From: Malacoraja senta
Lineage: Eukaryota
Assembly (NCBI GenBank): GCA_038087875.1
Contig: CM075977.1
Coordinates: 209,011,978 to 209,066,000, forward strand
Length of the DNA: 54,023 nucleotides
Reading direction: 5' to 3'
Under the pieces are notes generated by a model. That model did not search any database. It was not told the DNA's origin and worked only from the letters and a program-made list of their open reading frames with translations. Positions 4,210-50,050 of this stretch are shown one piece after another. The number at the start of each line of letters is the position of its first letter. Within the stretch, counting starts at the first letter, position 1. A program made the translations under genes and the position numbers.

Positions 4210-4368
4210 GGTTCACGAAAAGTTGCTCCTCGTGTGTAAGGATGCTAGACAGGTGAGCCCCCTGCAGACGACATTCCTTCTCCGCATCCTCCCAGGTCCG
4301 TCGGTGGCCAAAGTATTTGTAGCAATGTCCTTGGAATTTGTGCCATCCAAAATCACAGTCCTCCGTAT
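4210..4368 (-). CDS. vcan: Versican G3 C-type lectin domain, first exon (159 bp)
   Basis: tttgattgccag|...|gtacgt. Translates [53 protein letters not shown], nearly identical to the start of the versican lectin domain. Not in the ORF track. Confidence 0.96.
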
Positions 4369-18839: not shown

Positions 18840-18953
18840 CTTGTTCGCACAAAGCACCAGCATAACTTGGCAAGCAGACGCAGCTGAAACAGTTGACACC
18901 ATCAATACACGTGGCTCCATTCTGGCAAGGGTTGGACTGACACTCATCCACAT
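18840..18953 (-). CDS. vcan: Versican G3 EGF-like domain 2 (calcium-binding type) exon (114 bp)
   Basis: tttcattcag|...|gtaagt, phase 1-1. Translates [38 protein letters not shown], close to versican DFDECHSNPCRNGATCVDG..CLPSYVGALCEQ. Confidence 0.96.
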
Positions 18954-22184: not shown

Positions 22185-22301
22185 CTAGTTCACAGTGTTC
22201 CCCAGTAAATCCAGGAAAACAGGTACAGATGTAACTTGTCTCTCGTCGGAAGCAACTTCCTCCGTGATGGCAAGGGCTTTCTTCACATGGGTTAAAATGT
22301 G
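22185..22301 (-). CDS. vcan: Versican G3 EGF-like domain 1 exon (117 bp)
   Basis: tttgtcacag|...|gtaaga, phase 1-1. Translates [39 protein letters not shown], a 6-Cys EGF similar to versican EGF1 (..TETSYVCTCVPGYSGDQCEL). Confidence 0.95.
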
Positions 22302-25066: not shown

Positions 25067-28000
25067 CTGGAATATGAACAGCCTCTCCATCGTCCGGCCC
25101 GCTTCCAGTTATGGTTTCACCGGTTTTATTAAAGCCCCAATAATCAATATCAGAAATAATTGCCGGATGAATTGTTGATGCCACCATTGGTTTCCGTTAT
25201 TTTGATGTCAGATTCTGTTTCAGTAACATCGGTGCTTCTTGCCAAGAGTTTAGGGGCTTGTGTTAACCTCCGATCTTCTGATCTGTCAGGTGGTGAAGAT
25301 GGGGTAGTCTGGATTTCCTTTAACTTTGTTTGCCTATCAAGTGACACGACCGTCGTATTTTGGAGATCCTGTTGCTCCAATGTCTTCAGCTTCCCTGTCG
25401 AGCTCCGATATAAAGAAGGGGGAACTGTCGTGACCCTGGCGGCTTCCATTACATCCTTTTCAGCTTTACGTTCTGTAGATGGCCGTAAAAATGAAGTACT
25501 GACCACGGTCTCTTTAGAAATCTCCACATAGACTTTTTCTGTTGTTGAAGCCTTTACTTCTTCAAGTGTGACTCCTTGGGAATCGATTGTTGTTCCAACA
25601 CCATGTTCTTTAGCAGGCCTCTTTGCTTCATGCAAAGAAACTTCTTGCTCAGTTACCATATAAGCTGTTGTTCTGAGCGATTCTTTCTCAAATGTTTCAA
25701 GGGGAATGGAGTGTTCTGTTGAGCTTCCCATTTGTTGCAATGTCACATCAAGTTCGGATGAAGCTGTGGTATCATCTATGCCCTCCTCGGTCCTCCTGCC
25801 TGCCATTTGTGAAACCTCTTCATGAATAATAGTCGGCCACATTATTATCTGACTTGCTCCTGTCGTCAAACTTCCCGTTTCTTCCACTTTCATTCCCAGT
25901 GTTGTGGCTTGTGTGCCTTTAAATTCTTCATCCGGCTTTTCTTCAGAGAGCTTCTTTGTTGTATGTTCTTTTTCGTGTACAAAAACTTCAGCAGGCGATG
26001 AGATAAAACTAGCTGTGGATACCTCCACAGGTGTTCTGGGTCTCTGCGTCAAAATTACCGACTGCTCTTCAGCTGTGGGCACAGAAGTTGATTTCATGGA
26101 CAGACTTTTCGTAGTGATTATTTTAAAAACAAATGCAGATGAGGTGGGTGTAGAGGTGGCAGCTTTAACTGGCATGTCACTCAATATTTTACCTTCAGTT
26201 CTTACAGTGCTGTCTCCAGAAAATTCCTCTTTGAATGTACCAAAGGCTTCGATGGGCTTCTCCTGCTCAGTTGCAGACCGAACACTTGAGTACTCTGTAC
26301 CATTGACCATTAAGTATGTTGAGGTTTCTGAAAATGTACTTGGACCATCTCCTTCTTTCAGAGTAGTCCTCACAGTTGCTGCGAGCATCTCTTCTTTACC
26401 AGAAACGGCTTGTGACACATTCTCCTTCATATCTTCAGTGAATGAAGTGGACACTATTTCTCGAGAGGTGTCTGCAACTCTTCCTGGTACAATTGTGCCC
26501 ATCAATGGAGGTAATGTATCCTTCTCTGTATGAAGTTCATGCACACTTGGTCTGATTTTATCAAAGGAAACCATTGTGCTGATTGTTTGTGTTTGTTCCG
26601 GTGTCACTGTCATTAAAGGTGAAGACAGATCTCCTGATCCATCAATCTCTGTCTTAATGAATTTACTCCCGTCTTCAGTGTCATCATACTTCACTGCCTC
26701 AGTTTTGATCTTTTCCAAACTTTGCGTTACATTATCCTTTGGTAGATGAGTTGGAGACACAATTTTTACTTCAATTTCCTGTCTAACATCCTCTAATTTT
26801 CTATCAGCATCAATTATACCATCTGATTTTGTGCTGATTCCGATTTCCTGTTCCTCCAGAATGCTCAACCCACTGTCCTTCCCATTAATATAAATGACAC
26901 TAATATATTCATGAGGACCATCAGTACTTTCATCTCCTGGCAGTTCATCTGCATCATCGCTGGAAATTGTTGGTGACCCTGTTATCTCAACTACAGATTC
27001 CATTGTACCCTGTTGGATCTTTGTCAGTTCTTCTTTAACAGTGTGTCGCATAAGGTCAAATTTCTTATGATCTATCTGTCCAGTCTCAATGCTCTGAATG
27101 ATTTGTGTGTAATTCAAGTGATAGCCATCTGGGATGCTTACCCCATGAACCACCCGAGGCTGAAAACCATCCTTTTCACTTACGGTTAGGACAGGAGTTT
27201 CAGTAATTTCCGCTGTTTTGTTGACGTGAATACTGCTAACAACTATTTGAGGTTCCTTTGATAAAAACTCTTCACCTGTCAGATCAGGGACATAAGTAGT
27301 AGCAGGTTGGATGTCAGACTTTATCTCTGTTAAATTAGAACTTGCTTCCACGGTAAAAATAAGGACTGTTTCACTAGTTCCCTCATGAACACCCCTCAAT
27401 TGCTCCTTGGGAAATGTTGACTGCCTGTAGTAACCTTCAGTTGGTTGCAATTTTGGTTCACTAGAAAGTTCAATTTTCTCTTGTGGTCCTGCAGTGAAAA
27501 TGGTTGGCTGGACTTTTATTGTATGACGACCTTCACCAGAGCTCTCCTGCACACTTAATGGGACAATTGTGCTTGAGCTTACTTCCATAGAATCTCTAGT
27601 TATCAGCACTGTCCTCTCAGTTGAGTCTTCTTCACTTGTACTATCCCCTCCTTCTTCAGAGTGTTCTGATTCTGAAGTCTGGCTTAGTACATCTTCCACT
27701 CCTTCAGCACTTTCTTCTGACACCAATTTTGGCTTCTGTCCCACTGTAACCATCTCAGGCTCCCGCTCAATCTCCATTGGTTTCTTACTTATATTTGTAA
27801 TTTCAACTAAGGAATCTGTGGATGATATCGCTGATGGTTTTTTTGTCACTGAAATTTGCTGGGTGACCTCTGATATCAAAGTACCTTCCTTAGCCTTGCT
27901 ATCTTCATCAGAGATGCCCGTGACTAATGGCAGAGTTGTAATAGTAAAAATGTCTTCACCTGAACTTTCAACTTCCCCAGCCTGAATCTCTGAGGCTGTC

Positions 28001-31000
28001 TTTATCATTGATGGAGTGGATCCTTCAGTTGAGGATTTTACAGATAGCTCTGATTTAGCAGACATGCCTTCCTCCCCTGCTAGAGTAACATCAGCATGGA
28101 GAACACTTGTACTTAATAATGTAACAGTGCCACTCAATTTTGAAACCAAAATCTCTGTACCATCTTTGGCAGATGATTCAGTGCCAAATGTTTCTTCATC
28201 AAAACTCTTAATGACTGAAAAAGGTGTCGGCTCCTGTGAATGCTGGTCTGTTGCAGTAGGTAATCTAATTGCTGGAGATCTCTCAGAAGACTCTGTCGCC
28301 ATGGTTCTTGGCCTGCTTTGCAACACTGTACTTGCTGCTGTTGCTTCTGATGTGGATTTTTGAGACTTTAGTTCAAATGATGGTGTGACGGTTTCATGGC
28401 GAACGCCACCCACCATTTCCCCTATAACTGAAACTGACATAAACCTACTTTCGCTCTCAAAACCACTCGTCGGAAACTTGACGTCCAGTTGTGAATAGGT
28501 TTTCACCAGCAGATCCCCTGCCTCTGTGTGGGTCATTGGCCCAAGTGTGAAAATTCCTTTCCATTTACCAGGTGCAGCTGTAACTGCTGTATGGAGTGCT
28601 TCCTCATCCAAAAACGTTTTGTTCAACAAGGTAACCGGTTGGCTGCTCATTTTTGGAGAGGAATCATCAATAGACAACTGAATTGGTTGCTTAACTGTAA
28701 ACATCTCCACGCCAGAACTCTCAAAGACTTCCAGGAAAGGAGGTTGTTTGTCCAAATCCTTCTCCGTTATTCCAGATACGTCAGTTGCTGGAGGTTGCAC
28801 AGATGGTTCCTCAATAACTTTCTCCGAAATGGTTTGGATCTCAGCGATTATAGATTGTGCTTCTATTGTAGATCCCTGAGACTGCCTTTCAATTCCAGGT
28901 GTCATTGAAGTAGGTGGATACATCTCATCGATTACAATGGTGTCTGGGGAAAATGTGTATGTGGTTTCCTTATCACCAAAAGCGACTGTTGATGCAGACT
29001 GATCTGCCACCTGTGTGTGCACATTGACGAGCAAACCATCCATCTCTGTGTGTGCCTCAGGCAAGCCAGAGCCAGAAAAATCCTCCACAGATTCACGTTC
29101 ATCTGTAGCAGTGCTCTGGAGAGCTTCCACATCCACTAGAGTTTTACTAGTCACTGGTAAAAGAGTAGAGCTAATTTCTATCGTTGAAATAGTAGGGTGT
29201 AATCGAACTATTTTTTCGGCAGTAATCAGTTCTTCCCCAGAACCCTCAAATTCTGGAGAAGGAGGTAATTTGACTGAAACTTTCTCTGTTATTCCCGATT
29301 CCACAATTACTGGAGATTTCACAGTTGATGCTGTAACCAATTTCTCTGGGATGGTTTTGATGCCGGTGATCACTGATGATGCTTCTGATGTGGATTCTTG
29401 TAACTTTGTTTTCATTAATGGAGTAGCAGTGACAGGGCGTTCTCCTTCGACTAGTTCTTTAGTCACTGAATCAAATGTATACCTGGTTTCTTTCTCACCG
29501 GCCACATCTGTTGCTGCAGACCTGTCTTCCACCTGTGTCTGGACTTTTACCATCAAACCATCAGTGCGTGTGTGTGTGTCAGGTAATCCAGATGTTGTTA
29601 TTCCAGTCTCTTGGTCAGTTGCTGCTGGAACAGCACTGTGAAGAGCTTCCTCATCCAAATATAGTTCTGCTTGTCACTGGAGTTTCTTGGCTGCTCATCT
29701 CCAGTGTGGAAACATCAGGTTCAACCCGGCCAGTGTGTCCAATACTGAATGTTTCTTCACCAGAACTCTCAAATTCTGGAGAAGGCTGCAGTTTGTCTGA
29801 AACTTTCTCAGTTATTCCCGATTCATAAATTGCAGAGGGTTTCACAGTTGACGCCATAACCACTTTCCCTGCGATGGTTTCTATCTCAGTGATCACTGAT
29901 GGTATTTCCGATGAGGCTTTTCCAATGACTGGTGTAACTGTATCATGAGGAGAAACCTCTTCTGCTTCGCTGGTGACTGGAACTAACACATATCTGGTTT
30001 CCTTCTCGCCAATCACGATAGTAGATGCAGACATGTCAGTTGTTTGTGTGTGCACTTTAACCAGCAAACCATCCCACTCTGTGTGTATCTCCGACGAGCC
30101 AGACCCAGAAATTTCCTCCTCACTCTCACGAATAACTGTCACGGTGCTCTGGGGAGTTTTTGCATCAACTAGAGTTTTACTGGTGACAGGTAAAAGGGTA
30201 GAGCTTATTTCTGTGGTGGAAATATCAGTTCCAAATTGTGCAATTTGTTTGGAAGTAATCAGCTCTTCACCAGAACTCTCAAATTCTACCGAAGGACGTA
30301 GTTTGACTGAAACTTTCTCTGTTATCTCCGTTTCCACAGTAGCTGGAGATTTCCCAGTTGTTGCTGTATCCACTTTCTCTGGGATGGTTTTGATGCCGGT
30401 GATCACTGATGATGCTTCTGATGTGGTTTCTTGTAACTTTGTTTTCATTAATGGAGTACCAGTGACAGGGCGTTCTCCTTCGACTAGTTCTTTAGTCACT
30501 GAATCAAATGTATACCTGGTTTCTTTCTCACCGGCCACATCTGTTGCTGCAGACCTGTCTTCCACCTGTGTCTGGACTTTTACCATCAAACCATCAGTGC
30601 GTGTGTGTGTGTCAGGTAATCCAGATGTTGTTATTCCAGTCTCTTGGTCAGTTGCTGCTGGAACAGCACTGTGAAGAGCTTCCTCATCCAATATAGTTCT
30701 GCTTGTCACTGGAGTTTCTTGGCTGCTCATCTCCAGTGTGGAAACATCAGGTTCAACCTGGCCAGTGTGTCCAATACTCAATGTTTCTTCACCAGAACTC
30801 TCAAATTCTGGAGAAGGCTGCAGTTTGTCTGAAACTTTCTCAGTTATTCCTGATTCATAAATTGCAGAGGGTTTCACAGTTGACGCCATAACCACTTTCC
30901 CTGCGATGGTTTCGATCTCAGTGATCACTGATGGTATTTCTGATGAGGCTTTTCCAATGACTGGTGTAACTGTATCATGAGGAGAAACCTCTTCTGTTTC

Positions 31001-34000
31001 ACTGGTGACTGGAACTAACACATATCTGGTTTCCTTCTCGCCAATCACGACAGTAGATGCAGACATGTCAGTTGTTTGTGTGTGCACTTTAACCAGCAAA
31101 CCATCCCACTCTGTGTGTATCTCCGACGAGCCAGACCCAGAAATTTCCTCCTCACTGTCACGAATAACTGTCACGGTGCTCTGGGGAGTTTTTGCATCAA
31201 CTAGAGTTTTACTGGTGACAGGTAAAAGGGTAGAGCTTATTTCTGTGGTGGAAATATCAGTTCCAAATTGTGCAATTTGTTTGGAAGTAATCAGCTCTTC
31301 ACCAGAACTCTCAAATTCTACCGAAGGACGTAGTTTGACTGAAACTTTCTCTGTTATCTCCGTTTCCACAGTAGCTGGAGATTTCACAGTTGTTGCTGTA
31401 ACCACTTTCTCTGGGATGGTTTTGATGCCGGTGATCACTGATGATGCTTCTGATGTGGTTTCTTGTAACTTTGTTTTCATTAATGGAGTAGCAGTGACAG
31501 GGCGTTCTCCTTCGACTAGTTCTTTAGTCACTGAATCAAATGTATACCTGGTTTCTTTCTCACCGGCCACATCTGTTGCGGCAGACCTGTCTTCCACCTG
31601 TGTCTGGACTTTTACCATCAAACCATCAGTGCGTGTGTGTGTGTCAGGTAATCCAGATGTTGTTATTCCAGTCTCTTGGTCAGTTGCTGCTGGAACAGCA
31701 CTGTGAAGAGCTTCCTCATCCAATATAGTTCTGCTTGTCACTGGAGTTTCTTGGCTGCTCATCTCCAGTGTGGAACCATCAGTTTCAAAAAGGCCAGTGT
31801 GTCCAATACTCAATGTTTCTTCACCAGAACTCTCAAATTCTGGAGAAGGCTGCAGTTTGTCTGAAACTTTATCAGTTATTCCTGATTCATAAATTGCTGA
31901 GGGATTCACAGTTGACGCCATAACCACTTTCCCTGCGATGGTTTTGATCTCAGTGATCACTGATGGTATTTCCGATGAGGCTTTTCCAATGACTGGTGTA
32001 ACTGTATCATGAGGAGAAACCTCTTCTGTTTCGCTGGTGACTGGAACTAACACATATCTGGTTTCCTTCTCGCCAATCACGACAGTAGATGCAGACATGT
32101 CAGTTGTTTGTGTGTGCACTTTAACCAGCAAACCATCCCACTCTGTGTGTATCTCCGACGAGCCAGACCCAGAAATTTCCTCCTCACTCTCACGAATAAC
32201 TGTCACGGTGCTCTGGGGAGTTTTTGCATCAACTAGAGTTTTACTGGTGACAGGTAAAAGGGTAGAGCTTATTTCTGTGGTGGAAATATCAGTTCCAAAT
32301 TGTGCAATTTGTTTGGAAGTAATCAGCTCTTCACCAGAACTCTCAAATTCTACCGAAGGACGTAGTTTGACTGAAACTTTCTCTGTTATCTCCGTTTCCA
32401 CAGTAGCTGGAGATTTCACAGTTGTTGCTGTAACCACTTTCTCTGGGATGGTTTTGATGCCGGTGATCACTGATGATGCTTCTGATGTGGTTTCTTGTAA
32501 CTTTGTTTTCATTAATGGAGTAGCAGTGACAGGGCGTTCTCCTTCGACTAGTTCTTTTGTCACTGAATCAAATGTATACCTGGTTTCTTTCTCACCGGCC
32601 ACATCTGTTGCTGCAGACCTGTCTTCCACCTGTGTCTGGACTTTTACCATCAAACCATCAGTGCGTGTGTGTGTGTCAGGTAATCCAGATGTTGTTATTC
32701 CAGTCTCTTGGTCAGTTGCTGCTGGAACAGCACTGTGAAGAGCTTCCTCATCCAATATAGTTCTGCTTGTCACTGGAGTTTCTTGGCTGCTCATCTCCAG
32801 TGTGGAAACATCAGGTTCAACCCGGCCAGTGTGTCCAATACTCAATGTTTCTTCACCAGAACTCTCAAATTTTGGAGAAGGCTGCAGTTTGTCTGAAACT
32901 TTCTCAGTTATTCCTGATTCATAAATTGCAGAGGGTTTCACAGTTGACGCCATAACCACTTTCCCTGCGATGGTTTCGATCTCAGTGATCACTGATGGTA
33001 TTTCTGATGAGGCTTTTCCAATGACTGGTGTAACTGTATCATGAGGAGAAACCTCTTCTGTTTCACTGGTGACTGGAACTAACACATATCTGGTTTCCTT
33101 CTCGCCAATCACGACAGTAGATGCAGACTTGTCAGTTGTTTGTGTGTGCACTTTAACCAGCAAACCATCCCACTCTGTGTGTATCTCCGACGAGCCAGAC
33201 CCAGAAATGTCCTCCTCACTCTCACGAATAACTGTCACGGTGCTCTGGGGAGTTTTTGCATCAACTAGAGTTTTAATGGTGACAGGTAAAAGGGTAGGGC
33301 TTATTTCTGTGGTGGAAATATCAGTTCCAAATTGTGCAATTTGTTTGGAAGTAATCAGCTCTTCACCAGAACTCTCAAATTCTACAGAAGGAAGTAGTTT
33401 GACTGAAACTGTCTCTGTTATCTCCGTTTCCACAGTAGCTGGAGATTTCACAGTTGTTGCTGTAACCACTTTCTCTGGGATGGTTTTGATGCCGGTGATC
33501 ACTGATGATGCTTCTGATGTGGTTTCTTGTAACTTTGTTTTCATTAATGGAGTACCAGTGACAGGGCGTTCTCCTTCGACTAGTCCTTTAGTCACTGAAT
33601 CAAATGTATACCTGGTTTCTTTCTCACCGGCCACATCTGTTGCTGCAGACCTGTCTTCCACCTGTGTCTGGACTTTTACCATCAAACCATCAGTGCGTGT
33701 GTGTGTGTCAGGTAATCCAGATGTTGTTATTCCAGTCTCTTGGTCAGTTGCTGCTGGAACAGCACTGTGAAGAGCTTCCTCATCCAATATAGTTCTGCTT
33801 GTCACTGGAGTTTCTTGGCTGCTCATCTCCAGTGTGGAAACATCAGGTTCAACCCGGCCAGTGTGTCCAATACTCAATGTTTCTTCACCAGAACTCTCAA
33901 ATTCTGGAGAAGGCTGCAGTTTGTCTGAAACTTTCTCAGTTATTCCTGATTCATAAATTGCAGAGGGTTTCACAGTTGACGCCATAACCACTTTCCTTGC

Positions 34001-37000
34001 GATGGTTTCGATCTCAGTGATCACTGATGGTATTTCTGATGAGGCTTTTCCAATGACTGGTGTAACTGTATCATGAGGAGAAACCTCTTCTGTTTCACTG
34101 GTGACTGGAACTAACACATATCTGGTTTCCTTCTCGCCAATCACGACAGTAGATGCAGACTTGTCAGTTGTTTGTGTGTGCACTTTAACCAGCAAACCAT
34201 CCCACTCTGTGTGTATCTCCGACGAGCCAGACCCAGAAATTTCCTCCTCACTCTCACGAATAACTGTCACGGTGCTCTGGGGAGTTTTTGCATCAACTAG
34301 AGTTTTACTGGTGACAGGTAAAAGGGTAGAGCTTATTTCTGTGGTGGAAATATCAGTTCCAAATTGTGCAATTTGTTTGGAAGTAATCAGCTCTTCACCA
34401 GAACTCTCAAATTCTACCGAAGGACGTAGTTTGACTGAAACTTTCTCTGTTATCTCCGTTTCCACAGTAGCTGGAGATTTCACAGTTGTTGCTGTAACCA
34501 CTTTCTCTGGGATGGTTTTGATGCCGGTGATCACTGATGATGCTTCTGATGTGGTTTCTTGTAACTTTGTTTTCATTAATGGAGTAGCAGTGACAGGGCG
34601 TTCTCCTTCGACTAGTTCTTTTGTCACTGAATCAAATGTATACCTGGTTTCTTTCTCACCGGCCACATCTGTTGCTGCAGACCTGTCTTCCACCTGTGTC
34701 TGGACTTTTACCATCAAACCATCAGTGCGTGTGTGTGTGTCAGGTAATCCAGATGTTGTTATTCCAGTCTCTTGGTCAGTTGCTGCTGGAACAGCACTGT
34801 GAAGAGCTTCCTCATCCAATATAGTTCTGCTTGTCACTGGAGTTTCTTGGCTGCTCATCTCCAGTGTGGAAACATCAGGTTCAACCCGGCCAGTGTGTCC
34901 AATACTCAATGTTTCTTCACCAGAACTCTCAAATTTTGGAGAAGGCTGCAGTTTGTCTGAAACTTTCTCAGTTATTCCTGATTCATAAATTGCAGAGGGT
35001 TTCACAGTTGACGCCATAACCACTTTCCCTGCGATGGTTTCGATCTCAGTGATCACTGATGGTATTTCTGATGAGGCTTTTCCAATGACTGGTGTAACTG
35101 TATCATGAGGAGAAACCTCTTCTGTTTCACTGGTGACTGGAACTAACACATATCTGGTTTCCTTCTCGCCAATCACGACAGTAGATGCAGACTTGTCAGT
35201 TGTTTGTGTGTGCACTTTAACCAGCAAACCATCCCACTCTGTGTGTATCTCCGACGAGCCAGACCCAGAAATGTCCTCCTCACTCTCACGAATAACTGTC
35301 ACGGTGCTCTGGGGAGTTTTTGCATCAACTAGAGTTTTAATGGTGACAGGTAAAAGGGTAGGGCTTATTTCTGTGGTGGAAATATCAGTTCCAAATTGTG
35401 CAATTTGTTTGGAAGTAATCAGCTCTTCACCAGAACTCTCAAATTCTACAGAAGGAAGTAGTTTGACTGAAACTGTCTCTGTTATCTCCGTTTCCACAGT
35501 AGCTGGAGATTTCACAGTTGTTGCTGTAACCACTTTCTCTGGGATGGTTTTGATGCCGGTGATCACTGATGATGCTTCTGATGTGGTTTCTTGTAACTTT
35601 GTTTTCATTAATGGAGTACCAGTGACAGGGCGTTCTCCTTCGACTAGTCCTTTAGTCACTGAATCAAATGTATACCTGGTTTCTTTCTCACCGGCCACAT
35701 CTGTTGCTGCAGACCTGTCTTCCACCTGTGTCTGGACTTTTACCATCAAACCATCAGTGCGTGTGTGTGTGTCAGGTAATCCAGATGTTGTTATTCCAGT
35801 CTCTTGGTCAGTTGCTGCTGGAACAGCACTGTGAAGAGCTTCCTCATCCAATATAGTTCTGCTTGTCACTGGAGTTTCTTGGCTGCTCATCTCCAGTGTG
35901 GAAACATCAGGTTCAACCCGGCCAGTGTGTCCAATACTCAATGTTTCTTCACCAGAACTCTCAAATTCTGGAGAAGGCTGCAGTTTGTCTGAAACTTTCT
36001 CAGTTATTCCTGATTCATAAATTGCAGAGGGTTTCACAGTTGACGCCATAACCACTTTCCTTGCGATGGTTTCGATCTCAGTGATCACTGATGGTATTTC
36101 TGATGAGGCTTTTCCAATGACTGGTGTAACTGTATCATGAGGAGAAACCTCTTCTGTTTCACTGGTGACTGGAACTAACACATATCTGGTTTCCTTCTCG
36201 CCAATCACGACAGTAGATGCAGACTTGTCAGTTGTTTGTGTGTGCACTTTAACCAGCAAACCATCCCACTCTGTGTGTATCTCCGACGAGCCAGACCCAG
36301 AAATTTCCTCCTCACTCTCACGAATAACTGTCACGGTGCTCTGGGGAGTTTTTGCATCAACTAGAGTTTTACTGGTGACAGGTAAAAGGGTAGAGCTTAT
36401 TTCTGTGGTGGAAATATCAGTTCCAAATTGTGCAATTTGTTTGGAAGTAATCAGCTCTTCACCAGAACTCTCAAATTCTACCGAAGGACGTAGTTTGACT
36501 GAAACTTTCTCTGTTATCTCCGTTTCCACAGTAGCTGGAGATTTCACAGTTGTTGCTGTAACCACTTTCTCTGGGATGGTTTTGATGCCGGTGATCACTG
36601 ATGATGCTTCTGATGTGGTTTCTTGTAACTTTGTTTTCATTAATGGAGTAGCAGTGACAGGGCGTTCTCCTTCGACTAGTTCTTTTGTCACTGAATCAAA
36701 TGTATACCTGGTTTCTTTCTCACCGGCCACATCTGTTGCTGCAGACCTGTCTTCCACCTGTGTCTGGACTTTTACCATCAAACCATCAGTGCGTGTGTGT
36801 GTGTCAGGTAATCCAGATGTTGTTATTCCAGTCTCTTGGTCAGTTGCTGCTGGAACAGCACTGTGAAGAGCTTCCTCATCCAATATAGTTCTGCTTGTCA
36901 CTGGAGTTTCTTGGCTGCTCATCTCCAGTGTGGAAACATCAGGTTCAACCCGGCCAGTGTGTCCAATACTCAATGTTTCTTCACCAGAACTCTCAAATTT

Positions 37001-40000: not shown

Positions 40001-43000
40001 AGTTTCTTGGCTGCTCATCTCCAGTGTGGAAACATCAGGTTCAACCCGGCCAGTGTGTCCAATACTCAATGTTTCTTCACCAGAACTCTCAAATTCTGGA
40101 GAAGGCTGCAGTTTGTCTGAAACTTTATCAGTTATTCCTGATTCATAAATTGCAGAGGGTTTCACAGTTGACGCCATAACCACTTTCCCTGCGATGGTTT
40201 CTATCTCAGTGATCACTGATGGTATTTCTGATGAGGCTTTTCCAATGACTGGTGTAACTGTATCATGAGGAGAAACCTCTTCTGTTTCACTGGTGACTGG
40301 AACTAACACATATCTGGTTTCCTTCTCGCCAATCACGACAGTAGATGCAGACTTGTCAGTTGTTTGTGTGTGCACTTTAACCAGCAAACCATCCCACTCT
40401 GTGTGTATCTCCGACGAGCCAGACCCAGAAATGTCCTCCTCACTCTCACGAATAACTGTCACGGTGCTCTGGGGAGTTTTTGCATCAACTAGAGTTTTAC
40501 TGGTGACAGGTAAAAGGGTAGGGCTTATTTCTGTGGTGGAAATATCAGTTCCAAATTGTGCAATTTGTTTGGAAGTAATCAGCTCTTCACCAGAACTCTC
40601 AAATTCTACAGAAGGAAGTAGTTTGACTGAAACTGTCTCTGTTATCTCCGTTTCCACAGTAGCTGGAGATTTCACAGTTGTTGCTGTAACCACTTTCTCT
40701 GGGATGGTTTTGATGCCGGTGATCACTGATGATGCTTCTGATGTGGTTTCTTGTAACTTTGTTTTCATTAATGGAGTAGCAGTGACAGGGCGTTCTCCTT
40801 CGACTAGTTCTTTAGTCACTGAATCAAATGTATACCTGGTTTCTTTCTCACCGGCCACATCTGTTGCTGCAGACCTGTCTTCCACCTGTGTCTGGACTTT
40901 TACCATCAAACCATCAGCGCGTGTGTGTGTGGCAGGTAATCCAGATGTTGTTATTCCAGTCTCTTGGTCAGTTGCTGCTGGAACAGCACTGTGAAGAGCT
41001 TCCTCATCCAATATAGTTCTGCTTGTCACTGGAGTTTCTTGGCTGCTCATCTCCAGTGTGGAACCATCAGTTTCAAAAAGGCCAGTGTGTCCAATACTCA
41101 ATTTTTCTTCACTAGAACTCTCAAATTCTGGAGAAGGCTGCAGTTTGTCTGAAACTTTCTCAGTTATTCCTGATTCATAAATTGCTGAGGGATTCACAGT
41201 TGACGCCATAACCACTTTCCCTGCGATGGTTTTGATCTCAGTGATCACTGATGGTATTTCCGATGAGGCTTTTCCAATGACTGGTGTAACTGTATCATGA
41301 GGAGAAACCTCTTCTGTTTCGCTGGTGACTGGAACTAACACATATCTGGTTTCCTTCTCGCCAATCACGACAGTAGATGCAGACATGTCAGTTGTTTGTG
41401 TGTGCACTTTAACCAGCAAACCATCCCACTCTGTGTGTATCTCCGACGAGCCAGACCCAGAAATTTCCTCCTCACTGTCACGAATAACTGTCACGGTGCT
41501 CTGGGGAGTTTTTGCATCAACTAGAGTTTTACTGGTGACAGGTAAAAGGGTAGAGCTTATTTCTGTGGTGGAAATATCAGTTCCAAATTGTGCAATTTGT
41601 TTGGAAGTAATCAGCTCTTCACCAGAACTCTCAAATTCTACCGAAGGACGTAGTTTGACTGAAACTTTCTCTGTTATCTCCGTTTCCACAGTAGCTGGAG
41701 ATTTCCCAGTTGTTGCTGTAACCACTTTCTCTGGGATGGTTTTGATGCCGGTGATCACTGATGATGCTTCTGATGTGGTTTCTTGTAACTTTGTTTTCAT
41801 TAATGGAGTAGCAGTGACAGGGCGTTCTCCTTCGACTAGTTCTTTTGTCACTGAATCAAATGTATACCTGGTTTCTTTCTCACCTGCCACATCTGTTGCT
41901 GCAGACCTGTCTTCCACCTGTGTCTGGACTTTTACCATCAAACCATCAGTGCGTGTGTGTGTGTCAGGTAATCCAGATGTTGTTATTCCAGTCTCTTGGT
42001 CAGTTGCTGCTGGAACAGCACTGTGAAGAGCTTCCTCATCCAATATAGTTCTGCTTGTCACTGGAGTTTCTTGGCTGCTCATCTCCAGTGTGGAAACATC
42101 AGGTTCAACCCGGCCAGTGTGTCCAATACTCAATGTTTCTTCACCAGAACTCTCAAATTCTGGAGAAGGCTGCAGTTTGTCTGAAACTTTCTCAGTTATT
42201 CCTGATTCATAAATTGCAGAGGGTTTCACAGTTGACGCCATAACCACTTTCCCTGCGATGGTTTCGATCTCAGTGATCACTGATGGTATTTCTGATGAGG
42301 CTTTTCCAATGACTGGTGTAACTGTATCATGAGGAGAAACCTCTTCTGTTTCACTGGTGACTGGAACTAACACATATCTGGTTTCCTTCTCGCCAATCAC
42401 GACAGTAGATGCAGACTTGTCAGTTGTTTGTGTGTGCACTTTAACCAGCAAACCATCCCACTCTGTGTGTATCTCCGACGAGCCAGACCCAGAAATGTCC
42501 TCCTCACTCTCACGAATAACTGTCACGGTGCTCTGGGGAGTTTTTGCATCAACTAGAGTTTTACTGGTGACAGGTAAAAGGGTAGAGCTTATTTCTGTGG
42601 TGGAAATATCAGTTCCAAATTGTGCAATTTGTTTGGAAGTAATCAGCTCTTCACCAGAACTCTCAAATTCTACAGAAGGAAGTAGTTTGACTGAAACTGT
42701 CTCTGTTATCTCCGTTTCCACAGTAGCTGGAGATTTCACAGTTGTTGCTGTAACCACTTTCTCTGGGATGGTTTTGATGCCGGTGATCACTGATGATGCT
42801 TCTGATGTGGTTTCTTGTAACTTTGTTTTCATTAATGGAGTACCAGTGACAGGGCGTTCTCCTTCGACTAGTCCTTTAGTCACTGAATCAAATGTATACC
42901 TGGTTTCTTTCTCACCGGCCACATCTGTTGCTGCAGACCTGTCTTCCACCTGTGTCTGGACTTTTACCATCAAACCATCAGTGCGTGTGTGTGTGTCAGG

Positions 43001-46000
43001 TAATCCAGATGTTGTTATTCCAGTCTCTTGGTCAGTTGCTGCTGGAACAGCACTGTGAAGAGCTTCCTCATCCAATATAGTTCTGCTTGTCACTGGAGTT
43101 TCTTGGCTGCTCATCTCCAGTGTGGAAACATCAGGTTCAACCCGGCCAGTGTGTCCAATACTCAATGTTTCTTCACCAGAACTCTCAAATTTTGGAGAAG
43201 GCTGTAGTTTGTCTGAAACTTTCTCAGTTATTCCCGATTCATAAATTGCAGAGGGTTTCACAGTTGACGCCATAACCACTTTCCCTGCGATGGTTTCGAT
43301 CTCAGTGATCACTGATGGTATTTCTGATGAGGCTTTTCCAATGACTGGTGTAACTGTATCATGAGGAGAAACCTCTTCTGTTTCACTGGTGACTGGAACT
43401 AACACATATCTGGTTTCCTTCTCGCCAATCACGACAGTAGATGCAGACTTGTCAGTTGTTTGTGTGTGCACTTTAACCAGCAAACCATCCCACTCTGTGT
43501 GTATCTCCGACGAGCCAGACCCAGAAATGTCCTCCTCACTCTCACGAATAACTGTCACGGTGCTCTGGGGAGTTTTTGCATCAACTAGAGTTTTACTGGT
43601 GACAGGTAAAAGGGTAGAGCTTATTTCTGTGGTGGAAATATCAGTTCCAAATTGTGCAATTTGTTTGGAAGTAATCAGCTCTTCACCAGAACTCTCAAAT
43701 TCTACAGAAGGAAGTAGTTTGACTGAAACTGTCTCTGTTATCTCCGTTTCCACAGTAGCTGGAGATTTCACAGTTGTTGCTGTAACCACTTTCTCTGGGA
43801 TGGTTTTGATGCCGGTGATCACTGATGATGCTTCTGATGTGGTTTCTTGTAACTTTGTTTTCATTAATGGAGTACCAGTGACAGGGCGTTCTCCTTCGAC
43901 TAGTCCTTTAGTCACTGAATCAAATGTATACCTGGTTTCTTTCTCACCGGCCACATCTGTTGCTGCAGACCTGTCTTCCACCTGTGTCTGGACTTTTACC
44001 ATCAAACCATCAGTGCGTGTGTGTGTGTCAGGTAATCCAGATGTTGTTATTCTAGTCTCTTGGTCAGTTGCTGCTGGAACAGCACTGTGAAGAGCTTCCT
44101 CATCCAATATAGTTCTGCTTGTCACTGGAGTTTTTTGGCTGCTCATCTCCAGTGTGGAAACATCAGGTTCAACCCGGCCAGTGTGTCCAATACTCAATGT
44201 TTCTTCACCAGAACTCTCAAATTCTGGAGAAGGCTGCAGTTTGTCTGAAACTTTCTCAGTTATTCCCGATTCATAAATTGCAGAGGGTTTCACAGTTGAC
44301 GCCATAACCACTTTCCCTGCGATGGTTTCGATCTCAGTGATCACTGATGGTATTTCTGATGAGGCTTTTCCAATGACTGGTGTAACTGTATCATGAGGAG
44401 AAACCTCTTCTGTTTCACTGGTGACTGGAACTAACACATATCTGGTTTCCTTCTCGCCAATCACGACAGTAGATGCAGACTTGTCAGTTGTTAGTGTGTG
44501 CACTTTAACCAGCAAACCATCCCACTCTGTGTGTATCTCCGACGAGCCAGACCCAGAAATGTCCTCCTCACTCTCACGAATAACTGTCACGGTGCTCTGG
44601 GGAGTTTTTGCATCAACTAGAGTTTTACTGGTGACAGGTAAAAGGGTAGGGCTTATTTCTGTGGTGGAAATATCAGTTCCAAATTGTGCAATTTGTTTGG
44701 AAGTAATCAGCTCTTCACCAGAACTCTCAAATTCTACAGAAGGAAGTAGTTTGACTGAAACTGTCTCTGTTATCTCCGTTTCCACAGTAGCTGGAGATTT
44801 CACAGTTGTTGCTGTAACCACTTTCTCTGGGATGGTTTTGATGCCGGTGATCACTGATGATGCTTCTGATGTGGTTTCTTGTAACTTTGTTTTCATTAAT
44901 GGAGTACCAGTGACAGGGCGTTCTCCTTCGACTAGTTCTTTTGTCACTGAATCAAATGTATACCTGGTTTCTTTCTCACCGGCCACATCTGTTGCCTGCA
45001 TGAGGACTTTTACCATCAATCCTTCTCTATGTGTGTGTGCCTCAGGTAATGTAGATGTTGTTATTCCAGTCTCTTGATCAGTTGCTGCTGGAACAGTACT
45101 GTGAAGTACCTCCCCATCCAAAGATATTCTGCTGGTCACTGGAGTTTCTTGGCCCCTCACCTCTAATGTGGATGCACCAGGTTGAAACTGGCCAGTGGGT
45201 TTGATGTTAAATAATCCTTCACCAGAACTCTCAAACTCTGGAAAAGACGTTAGTTTGTCTGAAACTCGCTCCGTTATTCCAGATTCCTCAATTACTGGAG
45301 GTATCACAGTTGACTCCATATCCACTTTCTCTGGGGTGGTTTTGATTTCAGTGATGACTGACGGTGCCTCTGATGAGGATTGTTGAGATGTTTTTTCAAT
45401 TGCAGGTGTAACGGTATCATGGGGAACTCTCTCCTCTACTTCACTGGTTACTGAAGCTGATGCATATCTGGTTACCTTGTCACCATCCGCAACTGTTGAA
45501 GCAGCAGACTCATCTGTCACCTGGGTGTACCCTATCATCGGCACACCAACGTCCCTCTCTGTTGTTGCCTCTGTCCAGCCCGACGCAGTAGAATGCTCCT
45601 CACTCTCACCTGCAACTGGAACTGTGCTGTAGGGAACTTCCCCATCCATTAAAGTTTTACTAGTCACCGGTAAAAATGTAGAGCTCATTCCCATCATGGA
45701 AATATCAGGACCAAATTGAACAACTTGTTTGGAAGTAATCAGTTCTGCGCCAGAACTCTCAAATTCTAGAGGAGGCAGTTTGACGGAAACGTTCTCTGTT
45801 ATTCCTGATTCCACAGTTGCTGGAGATTTCACTGTTCTTGCTGTAACTGCTTTCTCTGGGATGGTTTTGACCTTAGTGATCATTGATGGTGTTTCTGAGG
45901 TGAATTCTTCTGACCTTTCTTTCATTACTGGGGTAGCAGTGACAGGGCGTTCTCCAGCATCCATTTTTCTTGTCACTGAATCAAATGTATATCTGGTTTC

Positions 46001-49000
46001 CTTATCAGCAAACACGACTGTAGCAGCAGACTTATCTTCCTCATCTATGTGGACTTTTACCATCAAACCTTCTCTCTGGGTGTGTGCCTCAGGTAATCCA
46101 GATATGGGTAATCCAGTCTCTTCATCGGGTGTTGCTGGTACAACACTCTGAAGTACCTCCCCATCCAATGATGTCCTGGTGGTCACTGGAGACTTGTGCC
46201 TGCTCACCTCTCGTGAGGAAACATCAGGATCAAACCGGCCAGTGTATTTAATAGTAAATATTCCTTCACCAGAACTCTCAAAATCTGGAGACGGGATTAG
46301 TTTGTCTGAAACTTTCTCCGTTATTCCTGATCTATCAATTGTTGGAGGTTTCACAGTTGACTCCACGACCACTTTCTCTGGAATGGTTTTGATCTCAGCA
46401 GTCACTGATGGTGCTTCTGATGAAGATTCTTGAGATACTTTTGCAATTGCAGGTGTAACAGTGTATTGGGGAATTCCCTCTTCTATTTCACTGCTGGCTG
46501 AATGGGATGTATATTTGGTTTCCTTATCGCCAACCACAACTGTTGAAGCAGGCTCGTTTGTCGTCTGTGTGCGGACTTTTACCAGCAAACCGTCCCTCGG
46601 TGTGTGTGTCTCCGCCCTCTCATGTGCAAATATGACAGTGCTGTGTGCAGCTTCCGCATCCACTGAAGCTTTACTGGACACTGGCGAAAGAGTAGACCTA
46701 ATTTCTAAAGTGGAGACGTCAGGTTCAAAGCGGCCAGTGTGTCCGGTCGTAAGCATTCCGTCTCCAGAAGTAATCAGCTCTTCACCAGAACTCTCAAATT
46801 CTGGAGAAGGAGTTAGTTTGACTGAAACTTTTGCTGTTATTCCCGATTCCATGGATGCAGGAGACTTTACTGTTGACTTTGTAACCACTTTCTCTGGGGT
46901 AGTTTTGATCTCTGTGATCACTGATGGTACTTCTGATGTGAATTCTGGTAACTTTTTTTTAATTACAGGGGCAGCAGTGACAGTGTGATCCCCTTCATCC
47001 ATTTTTTGTGTCACTGAATCAACCGTATAGGTTCCCTTATCACCATCCACAACTGTTGCTGCAGACTTGTCTTCCATCTCCGTGCGGTCTTTCACCTGGA
47101 AACCTTCAGTGCGTGTGTGTGCCTCAGTTAATCCAGATGTAGGTATTCCAGTCTCTCGATCGGGTGCTACAGGAACAGCACTGTGAAGTACATCCCCATC
47201 CAATGAAGTTCTGCTTGTCACTGTAGACTCATGGCGGCTTACCTCTGGTGTGGAAACATCAGGAAAAAAACGGCCTGTGGGTCTGATAGTAAACATTCCT
47301 TCACTGGAACTCTCAAAATCTGGGGAAAGGGGTAGTTCATCTGCAACTTTCTCCGTTATTCCTGATTCATCACTTGATGGAGGCTTCATAGTGGAGGCTG
47401 TAACCACTTTCTTTGGTGTTGCTTTGATCTCCGTGATCACTGATGGTGCTCCCGATGAGGTTTCTTGGGTTGTTTTTACAATTACAGGTTTAACAGTATC
47501 ATGAGGAGCTGCGTCTTCTACTTCACTGGTGACTGAAACTGATGTATATCTGGTTTCCTCGTGATCAACGATGACTGTTGATGTAGACTTTTCTGCCAGC
47601 TGTGTGTGGACTTTTACCAGCAAACCATCCCTCACTGTGTGTGCCTCCGGCAAACCAGAACCAGAAAATTCCTCCTCACTCTCACGTGTAACTGCAGCTG
47701 TACTGTGGAGAGCTGCCCCATCAACTAATGTTGTCTTGGTCACTGGTAAAGGTGTAGAGCTCATTTCTAATGTGGAATCGTCAGCCCCAAATTGAACCAT
47801 TTGTTTGGATGTAACCATTTTTTCACGAGAACTTACAATTTCTGGAGTAGGGGATGGTTTGACTGAAACTTTTTCCATTGTTCTGGTTTCCCCAATTGCT
47901 GGAGGTTTCAATGTTGATGCTGTAACCTTTTTCTCTGGGGTGGTTTTGAGCTCAGTGATGACTGATGGTCCTTCTGACGTGAATTCTTTTGACTTTTCTT
48001 GAATTACTGTGGAAGCATCATCTATTTCTCTTGTCACTGAATCAAATGTATATCCGGTTTCCTTGTCGCTAACCACAACTGTAGCAGCAGACTTGTCTTC
48101 CACTGTGTGGACTGTTACTAGCAAACCTTTCCTCTGGGTGTGTGCCTCAGGTAATCCAGATGTGGCTATTCCAGTATCTTGATCGTGTGCTGCTGGAACA
48201 GCACTGTGAAGGGTTACCTCATCCAATAATGTTCTGCTGGTCACTGGAGACTCATGGCTGCTCCCCTCAAGTGTGGAAATATCAGGACTGAACTGCCCTG
48301 TGGGTCTGACAGTAAACATTCCTGCACCAGAACTCTCAAAATCATGAGAAGATACTTCTTTGACTGGAGATTTCACTGTCAATACCTCAATTGTTGGATG
48401 TTTCACAGTTGATTCCACATCCATTATATCAGGGCTGGTTTTGCTCTCAGATATTACTGATGGTGTTTGCGATCTAACTGCGTGAGTTTGCTTATCAAAA
48501 GTCGTTGTGAGGGCATCATCGGGAATTCTCTCGTCCACTGCTTTTGTCGTCACTGAAACAGATGTCTGTAAGGTTTCCTTTTCAACGATCACTGTGGGCA
48601 CCTCTGTGAATGATAAAATAACTGTATCCTTACTCAGTGGTTCACCTGAACCTAACTCTGTAAATGGCGTGGCTATGCTTGTGGCTTCTTTAATTTTCTC
48701 GATGTCTTGGATTTTCTCCTCCACAGGTTTTGTTACTTTAGAAGAGTCCCATTCAGGTTTGTCGGTTACAATTTCAGTTCTGCTTATTGATAATTTGCTT
48801 GGTGTAATAGAACCTACTTCACGTTTTAGTTCCTCTGTACTTTCTTCTGGTTGTGATGTTTTGCCCTCACTGCCATCATATGATTCTGTGACAGCTTTAG
48901 TTTGTTCTCGCTTTCTTTCTGGGATCGTGGCTCGACCTTCCTCAGTTGCAGATGGTACAATAATACTGGGAGGGACAACTAACTTTGTAACCGGTGAAGG

Positions 49001-49959
49001 ACTAAGCATTTCTCCACCACGACTCTCATCAGGTCCAGGTGTGGACAAGGTTTCTGTGTACATTTCTATCGTTGCTGCTGTTTCCTGTTTTACATCTTTT
49101 TCAAAGGTTCTTGGATATAGTTCTGGCTCCCTTGGTTTGGTAGTTGTTTTATGGGGGGCACCTGGAATTGTAGTAGAAACCGGCTCAAACCCTTCAACAG
49201 AAGCCTCAACCGTTTCTTTATCAATTGTTTCGTGTGAAATGATGTCTTCAGTCCTGGTCACTGTTTCAGTTTTTGGTGAAGTAACGTCTTCTGACGCAGT
49301 TGTAACAATCCCAAAGAGGTGAGGTTTTTCCTCCGTTGATTCTGTGGTGAAAATCTGTTTGGGTGTCTTTTGAGCATCTCTGGATGAAGCAGCATCTTGC
49401 GTGCTGGGTGAGATGACCCAATGTTCTCCAGCAACACTAGAATGGATTCCCATCTGCTCTTCTGTAAACGTGGGTCTTTCAGATGGACTTTTAACACTGG
49501 AAACTGTTTTTGATCTCTCAGTGGAGATTCCTGGTTCCTGACTTTCAGCAGTTCCACTCTCAATCGTTGAGAAGTCCTCCTTGCTTTCGTCATCTTTTTC
49601 TATAACATCCATGTCTGGTATTGCACTTATACTGGGAGATACCCTTTCCACTTGGTCTCCCCTGGCTTCCTCACCACGGGTATAAGGCGGCTCAAATTCT
49701 ATCCGCGTCTTCCCATTAATAAAGCTGAGCGATTGGTGAGCATCCTGCACTGGAGCCGCTGTGGGAACTTGCGGGAAGACAAATTTGGTAAAGTCAGATT
49801 CTCCACTGCCGATGATTCCACCCTCCTCCTCTCTGACATCAAAGTGAATGTGCATAAAGTGAATCTTGGAGCCCGATCGTTGCGTCACACCTTCAGCCGA
49901 TTGATTGAGTGGCAATAAAAGTGGTTCTGTTGGAGTTTTTCCAGCTTCTGGTACAAGCT
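25067..49959 (-). CDS. vcan: Versican giant GAG-beta (chondroitin-sulfate attachment) exon, ~8,297 codons after correcting two +1 frameshifts
   Basis: Acceptor ttttttaatgtatttacag|AG (exon starts 49959) and donor CCAG|gtatga (exon ends 25067), both phase 1. Covered by ORFs 29651-50002 and 25150-29658, which are S/T/E-rich with many SG dipeptides. The N-terminal FINGK...EEARGDQVERVSP resembles versican YINGK...AEARRGQFESVAP, and the C-terminal GEAVHIP resembles GTAIYLP before EGF1. Length 24,893 = 3n+2, matching two single-base insertions. Confidence 0.9.
28400..29319 (-). repeat. Diverged monomers of the coding repeat (3' flank of array)
   Basis: EFEGSGEE (~29240) and VFESSGVE (~28715) anchors with the same downstream motifs. 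Confidence 0.8.
29320..44995 (-). repeat. Coding tandem array of ~15 near-identical 1032-bp units (344 aa)
   Basis: Identical landmarks recur every 1032 bp (shadow ORFs start at 29973, 31005, 32037 ... 44421 = 15 copies). Units differ by scattered substitutions only. Confidence 0.97.
44996..48345 (-). repeat. Older diverged ~170-aa monomers of the same coding repeat (5' flank of array)
   Basis: FESSG/FESSS/IVSSR anchors at about 45225, 45755, 46275, 46790, 47310, 47830 and 48335, each followed by ..PVTSRT..GLLVKVHT..KETRY..SVITEIKT motifs with in-frame indels. Confidence 0.9.
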
Positions 49960-50050
49960 CTGTAAATACATTAAAAAATATATATACATCAGTGACACAC
50001 ATGGGAATCTAGGAAGAGAAACAGGCCCATCAAAATTAATTCTACTTTCA

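What the first reader, a model, noticed from the sequence alone, without database searches (positions are those of the whole stretch)
25067..49959. A ~24.9-kb single coding exon: versican GAG-beta expanded to ~8,300 aa
Seen: canonical phase-1 acceptor and donor 24,893 bp apart, with coding sequence throughout apart from two 1-bp slips. Known: human VCAN GAG-beta exon 8 is ~5.3 kb (~1,750 aa), and the largest human coding exons (MUC16, TTN) are roughly 17-22 kb. Inference: this exon is ~4.7x the human one and among the longest vertebrate coding exons, giving a core protein near 1 MDa before glycosylation. Such a hyper-extended proteoglycan could matter for cartilage, notochord or jelly-type matrices in a chondrichthyan.
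Basis: partly seen in the sequence, partly recalled or inferred. Interest (0 to 1): 0.85.

Follow-up and report, generated by a model that had tools for sequence, protein, structure and literature searches.

The report
Giant versican GAG-beta exon in skate
A skate's versican gene carries one uninterrupted 24.9-kb coding exon (about 8,300 amino acids, about 120 likely sugar-chain sites). It was built by recent tandem copying of a 344-residue cassette, so a familiar matrix proteoglycan becomes a roughly 1-MDa, mucin-like giant.

Summary
On the minus strand, a canonical acceptor (exon starts at 49959) and donor (exon ends at 25067) bracket 24,893 bp of coding sequence with two frame breaks.

Both breaks are single extra bases of this assembly, at 29657 and 25191. 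Two DNA runs and one RNA run leave them out. Without them the exon is 24,891 nt with no stop.

An RNA contig from a related skate joins 25067 to the EGF1 exon at 22301. No junction read was found for the acceptor.

The gene is versican and the exon is GAG-beta. EGF, EGF and C-type lectin exons follow it. All close relatives are named versican. The conserved N-terminal motif holding the ADAMTS Glu-Ala site lies about 96 residues into the exon.

The size comes from 40 copies of a ~172-aa module seen only in elasmobranch versicans (about 1-5 to 26 copies elsewhere). These include 14-15 near-identical 1032-bp cassettes, and read depth supports about 14.

An independent skate assembly (Rhinoraja longicauda) has a fully open 22,560-bp orthologue, which NCBI splits into two models. 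The core arrays are species-specific.

It is not a vertebrate record, because human MUC12 and MUC4 repeat exons are longer. Two sibling notes of this scan (s1-172317, s1-172349) cover the same stretch.

The parts
25067..49959 (-). Versican GAG-beta exon: 24,893 bp as assembled, 24,891 nt by reads. Phase 1 at both ends; 8,296 full codons.
49960..49980 (-). Acceptor AG (49961-49960) with a T-rich tract. Conserved in Rhinoraja longicauda. Not confirmed by a junction read.
25065..25066 (-). Donor GT. The junction 25067|22301 is seen in an RNA contig of a related skate (run X1).
29657..29657 (-). Extra base in the assembly (TTT run on the coding strand). It causes the first frame break and is left out in X19, X20 and X1.
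25191..25191 (-). Extra base in the assembly (AAA run on the coding strand). It causes the second frame break and is left out in X19, X20 and X1.
49652..49672 (-). EEARGDQ, inside the conserved FINGK...VERVSPS motif at exon residue about 96. It is the counterpart of the mammalian ADAMTS Glu441-Ala442 (DPEAAE|A) site.
   Evidence: PMC11526477
28132..48598 (-). Whole array of 40 modules of about 172 aa, equal to about 20 cassettes of 344 aa.
45143..48247 (-). Three old cassettes, about 74-75% identical to the core. Two of them (48247-47229 and 47223-46197) are 1:1 orthologous to Rhinoraja cassettes.
29681..45142 (-). Young core of the array. One cassette is 94% identical to the reference and 14 cassettes of exactly 1032 bp are 97.6-100% identical. 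They form a species-specific clade.
32777..37936 (-). 5,160 bp with perfect 2064-bp periodicity. Units starting at 37936, 35872 and 33808 are identical; units at 36904 and 34840 are identical.
28712..29680 (-). Terminal diverged cassette (82% identical to the core), orthologous to the last Rhinoraja cassette.
25068..28711 (-). Unique C-terminal part of GAG-beta. It is 85% identical in protein to Rhinoraja, with omega 0.54.
22185..22301 (-). EGF1 exon of G3 (117 nt, phase 1-1).
18840..18953 (-). EGF2 exon of G3 (114 nt, phase 1-1).
4210..4368 (-). First C-type lectin exon of G3, 96% identical to Pristis versican. The 3' end is approximate.

Best explanation
This is the intact GAG-beta exon (the exon 8 equivalent) of a skate versican gene. 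It is read on the minus strand from 49959 to 25067 as one open frame of 8,297 codons.

Its size comes from a ~172-aa module found in elasmobranchs, paired into a 344-aa cassette. That cassette was tandemly amplified and/or homogenised, most likely by unequal crossing-over, after the split from the Rhinoraja lineage. The result is 14-15 near-identical 1032-bp copies inside an older, diverged array.

Each cassette brings about six Ser-Gly dipeptides, mostly in acidic context (EFESSGEE, EEDISGSGSSE). The exon therefore offers about 120 candidate chondroitin-sulfate attachment sites on an acidic (pI 4.6), Thr/Ser/Glu/Val-rich and probably unfolded core.

When the exon is included, the protein would link hyaluronan (through G1) and G3 ligands across a very long, densely glycosylated bottle-brush. 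The phase 1-1 boundaries leave exon skipping in frame, as in mammals. The conserved Glu-Ala motif near the exon start suggests that ADAMTS release of a versikine-like G1 fragment is retained.

Shown: the open frame, the donor junction, the array anatomy and its read-depth support, gene identity, the orthologue, and species-specific amplification. Inferred: the acceptor, full-length inclusion in mRNA, GAG substitution, cleavage, and the biological role.
For: Open frame and splice sites.

Both frame breaks are refuted by reads of three runs. The corrected exon has 0 stops.

Donor junction 25067|22301 in RNA.

Transcription. RNA contigs of a related species cover 47200-49595, while unique intron 51314-52061 has zero depth.

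Versican identity.

GAG-beta identity. The conserved motif lies at the same distance from the exon start as in turtle and bird V1-type isoforms. The human exon 8 acceptor is phase 1, read from c.4004-2A>T in PMC3130719.

Array.

Copy number. The X19 unique contig has depth 28.9 and the collapsed repeat contig 409.5, a ratio of about 14.

Orthologue. The Rhinoraja longicauda exon is 22,560 bp and fully open, with the same splice sites.

Cassette tree. Core arrays form species-specific clades with 100/100 support, while flank cassettes are orthologous.

Selection. Omega is about 0.55 in the unique flanks.

GAG sites. 121 of 126 SG dipeptides have at least 2 acidic residues within 6 positions.

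Cryptic donors. Strong donor hexamers (GTRAGT) are scarce in the exon, 2 seen against about 17 expected.
Against: - No read or contig crosses the acceptor at 49959.
- RNA evidence comes from related species and covers only parts of the exon. No RNA data span the core array, so internal splicing or partial inclusion is not excluded.
- Five array units are pairwise identical over 5.2 kb. Depth can only roughly check the exact copy number in such a block.
- X20 gives a lower depth ratio of about 10.
- Variation among the young copies looks neutral (10 synonymous and 31 nonsynonymous sites, omega about 1). There is thus no sequence sign that the extra copies are individually selected.
- GAG attachment is predicted from motifs only.
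Confidence: 0.85

Rival explanations
1. The array length is an assembly artefact. Under this view a shorter array was over-expanded by the assembler, so the true exon is much shorter.
For: Units within 32777-37936 are perfectly identical in an ABABA pattern. The assembly has at least two consensus errors in this exon. The X20 depth ratio is only about 10.
Against: In X19 the collapsed repeat contig is 14.2 times deeper than the adjacent unique contig, matching 14-15 assembled copies. An independent assembly of another skate holds 17 cassettes in a 22.6-kb open exon. The other core copies differ by 3-27 substitutions, as expected of real paralogous units.
Confidence: 0.07
2. The interval is open DNA but not one exon in the mature mRNA. 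Parts of the repeat would be removed as introns, or the exon would usually be skipped (V2/V3-type transcripts), so the 1-MDa protein would be rare or absent.
For: No RNA data span the core array. Mammalian exon 8 is alternatively skipped (PMC3130719). NCBI's pipeline split the Rhinoraja orthologue into two models that contain small introns.
Against: The frame is kept open over 22-25 kb in two species despite array turnover. Omega is about 0.55 in the flanks. Strong donor motifs are depleted and absent from the core cassette. RNA contigs are colinear with the genome over 1.4 kb near the 5' end and at the 3' end. Gene models of other elasmobranchs carry 1,900-5,000 aa of the same region.
Confidence: 0.12
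3. It is a decaying or pseudogenised exon, as the two frameshifts would suggest.
For: The window as assembled carries two frame breaks.
Against: Three independent runs lack both extra bases. The corrected peptide matches the Rhinoraja orthologue across both sites. There are no other stops in 24.9 kb.
Confidence: 0.02
4. It belongs to a different gene: a mucin (as NCBI's 'mucin-17-like' label for the Leucoraja fragment suggests) or the aggrecan chondroitin-sulfate exon.
For: The composition is mucin-like (T 15%, S 12%). NCBI gives 'mucin-17-like' names to fragments in Leucoraja and Heterodontus.
Against: The exon is spliced to lectican G3 exons. Full-length relatives carry V-set, two link modules, EGF, lectin and sushi domains and are named versican. 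There is no second link-module pair. The GAG-beta N-terminal motif is conserved. Pfam finds no SEA or VWD domain.
Confidence: 0.02

Closest known systems
Mammalian, bird and reptile versican (VCAN/PG-M) GAG-beta exon 8
   Same: Same position: the last large exon before the EGF-EGF-lectin-sushi exons. Phase 1-1 boundaries. A conserved N-terminal motif with the Glu-Ala ADAMTS site about 93-96 residues in. Acidic Ser-Gly attachment motifs. No folded domain (PMC3130719; PMC11526477).
   Different: It is about 4.5 times longer: 8,297 codons against about 1,800 in a turtle (about 2,150 residues for GAG-beta plus G3 by isoform comparison). It is built around 40 copies of a ~172-aa module that a profile does not detect in turtle, lizard, bird or salmonid versicans. 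It also holds a young, near-identical tandem array.
Versicans of other elasmobranchs (public predicted proteins: Scyliorhinus canicula 6,895 aa, Chiloscyllium plagiosum 5,956 aa, Hypanus, Mobula, Pristis, Narcine, Heptranchias)
   Same: Same gene, same module, same flanks. The homologous region is already long, at 1,866-5,047 aa.
   Different: Module number is highest here: 40, against 36 in Rhinoraja and 1-26 elsewhere. The skate cores were amplified independently in each lineage. Skate gene models are fragmented or misnamed in public annotation.
Mucin VNTR exons (MUC16, MUC4, MUC12)
   Same: One giant internal coding exon made of tandem repeats, rich in Ser/Thr, with diverged edge repeats and a homogenised centre. 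Sizes are 10 kb to more than 25 kb (PMC3467050, PMC13345508).
   Different: A different gene family and domain context (a hyaluronan-binding lectican). The repeat unit is much longer (1032 bp). The motifs are for glycosaminoglycan attachment rather than a pure PTS repeat.
Aggrecan CS1/CS2 exon
   Same: A lectican with a large single exon of repeated Ser-Gly units that varies in repeat number (textbook knowledge, not tested here).
   Different: Aggrecan has a G2 domain and short (~20-aa) repeats. The orthologues here have only two link modules and are named versican.

Membership tests
Versican (lectican family), GAG-beta exon | Followed directly by G3 exons: EGF, EGF, C-type lectin | tested here: met
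   Pfam finds EGF and Lectin_C on the downstream exons. tblastn of the Pristis versican C-terminus maps EGF1, EGF2 and CLECT at 76-96% identity. An RNA contig joins 25067 to 22301.
Versican (lectican family), GAG-beta exon | G1 made of an Ig V-set domain plus exactly two link modules, with no G2 | tested here: inconclusive
   G1 lies outside the window: there is no match to the first 1,500 aa of Pristis versican. In three orthologues Pfam finds V-set plus two Xlink stretches only.
Versican (lectican family), GAG-beta exon | Cassette-type exon with phase 1 at both ends, so that skipping keeps the frame | tested here: met
   The acceptor leaves 2 bases and the donor 1 base of split codons. The corrected length is 24,891, which is 3 x 8,297. 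The human exon 8 acceptor is phase 1, from c.4004-2 (PMC3130719).
Versican (lectican family), GAG-beta exon | Conserved N-terminal GAG-beta motif with the ADAMTS Glu-Ala site about 93 residues after the exon start | tested here: met
   FINGK...GEEARGDQVERVSPS at exon residue about 96 aligns with FINGK...AEEARSDQIESV of turtle and bird V1-type isoforms, about 70-95 residues after the G1 junction. Cleavage itself was not tested.
Versican (lectican family), GAG-beta exon | Preceded by a separate GAG-alpha exon | not testable with these tools
   The upstream 4 kb of the window is intron. In orthologues about 1,000 residues lie between G1 and the start of homology to this exon.
Versican (lectican family), GAG-beta exon | Carries chondroitin sulfate on Ser-Gly sites | not testable with these tools
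   Motifs only: 126 SG dipeptides, 121 of them in acidic context.
Aggrecan | G2 domain (a second pair of link modules) before the GAG exon | tested here: not met
   The first 1,400-1,600 aa of the orthologues show only two Xlink stretches.
Mucins (NCBI label 'mucin-17-like' on skate fragments) | PTS repeat exon in a gene with SEA or VWD domains | tested here: not met
   No such domains are found. The exon is spliced to lectican G3 exons.

The most novel reading that the evidence does not exclude
The skate versican array may behave like a mucin VNTR. On this reading it is a fast-evolving, copy-number-variable coding array whose module number sets the valency of sulfated glycan chains. The resulting ~1-MDa, Ser/Thr-rich core would then be a scaffold of an elasmobranch-specific hydrogel. 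[quoted passage not shown] The evidence here neither places the protein in any tissue nor shows which glycans it carries.
Probability: 0.08. Interest if true: 0.8.

Novelty: new variant of a known kind. Interest (0 to 1): 0.45.

Why it matters
- It shows that a lectican can evolve in the manner of a mucin VNTR. One long cassette was amplified independently in related lineages, multiplying candidate glycosaminoglycan sites about ten-fold over the number usually quoted for mammalian versican (from general knowledge, not checked here).
- It gives a natural series of 1-5 to 40 modules across sharks, rays and skates. That series could be used to ask how core length and chain valency shape hyaluronan matrices.
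- It is also a practical warning. Two 1-bp consensus errors and the repeat structure break or mislabel this gene in public skate annotations ('uncharacterized protein', 'mucin-17-like'), so the largest versicans are invisible in protein databases.
- A 25-kb internal exon is a good test case for exon definition outside the mucins.

Tried and rejected
- Tandem Repeats Finder reported nothing, because the 1032-bp period exceeds its 500-bp limit. A k-mer spacing analysis and blastn were used instead.
- Pfam has no family for the GAG region; only sub-threshold noise appeared.
- The second read-laying run did not reach the acceptor. RNA contigs stop at 49595, and the intron beyond 50005 is swamped by repeat-derived contigs.
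- Runs of organism B are probably DNA and matched only a 45-bp piece.
- Fetching loci of other elasmobranch versicans failed. S. canicula was too long for the tool, the Pristis gene spans 155 kb, and the S. torazame file was too large. Exon lengths outside skates are therefore protein-level estimates.
- The PDB search only returned generic C-type lectin and EGF chains plus the aggrecan lectin domain. It did not help to separate lectican paralogues.
- The G3-based protein search was flooded by multi-EGF proteins, but it did supply bony-vertebrate versicans.
- Three literature searches found no paper on elasmobranch versican size.
- The pseudogene, mucin and aggrecan readings were rejected, as set out under the rival explanations.
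Full report
**Observation.**
The window holds two very long minus-strand open frames, 29651-50002 (6,783 aa) and 25150-29658 (1,502 aa). AT skew is constant from 25 to 50 kb.
- The acceptor reads ...tttacag|AGCTTG, so the exon starts at 49959.
- The donor reads CCAG|gtatga, so the last exon base is 25067.
- Within the 24,893-bp exon the coding frame steps +1 near 29657 and again between 25153 and 25200. The last 40 codons (…GSGPDDGEAVHIP) run into the donor in phase 1.
- The other two sense frames carry 444 and 577 stops.

**The two slips are assembly errors.**
Logan contigs of four runs were laid on 25000-29900.
- X19 and X20 hold 0.86-0.98 of the sampled words. Their contigs run on into the intron, so they are DNA.
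- X1 is an RNA run of a relative about 97% identical to the window.
- All three leave out exactly one base at 25191 and one at 29657.
- Both sites are 3-base homopolymers.
- With those two bases removed the exon is 24,891 nt, giving 8,296 full codons and no stop. The peptide across each site then matches the orthologue of another skate.

**Splicing and transcription.**
- An 890-nt X1 contig fits 25067-25432 and then continues with letters that occur exactly once in the window, at 22272-22301.
- That place is preceded by AG and opens an EGF exon, 22301-22185. The donor at 25067 is therefore used in RNA.
- For the acceptor I found no junction. RNA contigs of organism C (about 93% identical, up to 1,369 nt) cover 47200-49595. 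Unique intron at 51314-52061 has zero depth in all four runs. This argues for transcription rather than DNA carry-over, but the acceptor remains inferred.
- The inference rests on four things: the AG and its T-rich tract, conservation in Rhinoraja, a stop 15 codons upstream, and the point where homology to other versicans begins.
- Strong donor hexamers are scarce in the exon: 2 GTRAGT against about 17 expected, and none in the core cassette.

**Gene identity.**
- Downstream exons are EGF1, EGF2 (18953-18840) and the first C-type lectin exon (4368-about 4210).
- The unique N-terminal 1,400 residues find nine proteins: six named versican core protein-like, one PG-M (UniRef) and two labelled only uncharacterized. 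They come from rays, sawfish, an electric ray and sharks, and are 3,732-6,895 aa long.
- Three of these were scanned. Each has a V-set domain and only two link modules before the GAG region, which excludes aggrecan.
- A G3-based search adds bony-vertebrate versicans at 68-76% identity.
- In turtle V1-type isoforms GAG-beta starts right after residue 348.
- The motif FINGK…(A/G)EEAR(S/G)DQ(I/V)E lies about 70-95 residues after that junction. It lies at residue about 96 of this exon.
- This motif is the region of the mammalian ADAMTS site Glu441-Ala442, DPEAAE|A (PMC11526477).
- Exons 7 and 8 encode GAG-alpha and GAG-beta and are alternatively spliced (PMC3130719). The human exon 8 acceptor (c.4004-2) is phase 1, as it is here.
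- No GAG-alpha or G1 exon lies in the 4 kb upstream.

**Why the exon is so long.**
- k-mer spacing shows a 1032-bp period.
- In register, the cassettes are:
  - three old cassettes (48247-45143, about 74-75% identical to the core);
  - one at 94% (45142-44129);
  - fourteen of exactly 1032 bp at 97.6-100% (44128-29681);
  - a terminal one at 82% (29680-28712).
- Inside the core, units starting at 37936, 35872 and 33808 are identical, and so are units at 36904 and 34840. This is a 2064-bp higher-order repeat.
- Each 344-aa cassette is a diverged dimer of a ~172-aa module, and a profile counts 40 modules.
- The core has 41 variable sites, 10 synonymous and 31 nonsynonymous, so omega is about 1.
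- Read depth agrees with the assembly. In X19 the unique contig has depth 28.9 and the collapsed repeat contig 409.5, a ratio of 14.2. X20 gives about 10 at very low coverage.

**Comparative picture.**
- phmmer of one cassette against 1.84 billion representative proteins finds only eight. All are elasmobranch proteins: four are labelled versican or PG-M, two 'mucin-17-like' (Leucoraja erinacea, Heterodontus) and two 'uncharacterized protein' (Rhinoraja longicauda, Mustelus asterias).
- A profile built from elasmobranch modules finds none in turtle, lizard, bird or salmonid versicans.
- Module counts:

| Taxon | Modules |
|---|---|
| Heptranchias | 1-5 |
| Narcine | 6-7 |
| Pristis | 8-9 |
| Stingrays | 10-15 |
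| Mustelus | 13-19 |
| Catsharks and bamboo shark | 14-26 |
| Rhinoraja | 36 |
| This window | 40 |

- The region homologous to this exon measures 1,866-5,047 aa in those proteins.
- The Rhinoraja longicauda locus (L001 plus L002) contains the orthologous exon with the same splice sites. It is 22,560 bp with 7,519 codons and no stop. NCBI splits it into two adjacent gene models.
- In a tree of all cassettes, the outer cassettes pair 1:1 between the two skates.
- The 15 core cassettes of the window form one clade with 100/100 support, and 10 Rhinoraja core cassettes form its sister clade with the same support.
- A further four-member Rhinoraja-only clade also has 100/100 support.
- The cores were therefore amplified or homogenised after the lineages split.
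- The unique flanks evolve with omega of about 0.55 and dS of about 0.12.

**Protein properties.**
- The exon encodes 889 kDa with pI 4.6. Composition is T 15%, S 12%, E 12% and V 10%.
- 121 of 126 SG dipeptides have at least two acidic residues within six positions.
- With G1, GAG-alpha and G3 added (about 1,700 aa in orthologues), a V0-type core would be about 1 MDa. This is an inference.

**Context.**
- Reported human giants are MUC16 exon 3 at >21 kb and TTN at >17 kb (PMC3467050).
- Long-read pangenomes report MUC4 repeat alleles of 27.8 kb and MUC12 proteins up to 23,080 aa (PMC13345508).
- The exon is therefore very large but not a vertebrate record. It is the largest lectican exon I could find.
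- No paper on elasmobranch versican size turned up.

**Verdict.**
This is a real, intact and hyper-expanded versican GAG-beta exon. Still open are full-length inclusion in mRNA, the exact copy number and whether it is polymorphic, actual glycosylation, and the tissue role.

Noticed in passing
L001:1-24594 and L002:1-77621 (Rhinoraja longicauda, CM130165.1): The orthologous 22,560-bp exon is fully open. NCBI nevertheless annotates it as two adjacent genes: LOC144611327 (1,505 aa) and LOC144592138 (3,687 aa). Leucoraja erinacea and Heterodontus fragments of the same exon are labelled 'mucin-17-like'.
   Followed up: yes
window 50005-51313 and 52062-52800: Intronic stretches draw very high depths of RNA-run contigs in all four runs (up to about 64,000), with many rearranged joints. 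They are probably an abundant expressed interspersed repeat family. This also hid any acceptor junction.
   Followed up: no
window 15943-17382 (-): Broken reverse-transcriptase ORFs (Pfam RVT_1) of a LINE-like element lie in the intron between EGF2 and the lectin exon. They coincide with a GC peak of 0.51.
   Followed up: partly
window 29221-29900 (runs X19 and X20): The repeat-to-unique depth ratio is about 14 in X19 but about 10 in X20. This may hint at cassette copy-number differences between individuals. X20 coverage is only about 4x, so the hint is weak.
   Followed up: no
window 49652-49672 (-): An RGD tripeptide follows directly after the predicted ADAMTS Glu-Ala bond (EE|ARGDQ). It is present in six of the seven elasmobranch sequences aligned (Scyliorhinus canicula has EEAKGGQ), while turtles and a bird have ARSDQ. 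Cleavage would expose it at the new N-terminus.
   Followed up: no
window 27336 and 48015-48290: In-frame length differences appear in other individuals or species: +AGA behind 27336 in X20, and +18, +3 and -18 bp in RNA contigs of organism C. The unique parts of the exon therefore tolerate codon-multiple indels.
   Followed up: no
window 48507-49322 (+): A 271-aa antisense open frame lies inside the exon. It is most likely a by-product of the skewed, stop-poor composition and not a gene.
   Followed up: no
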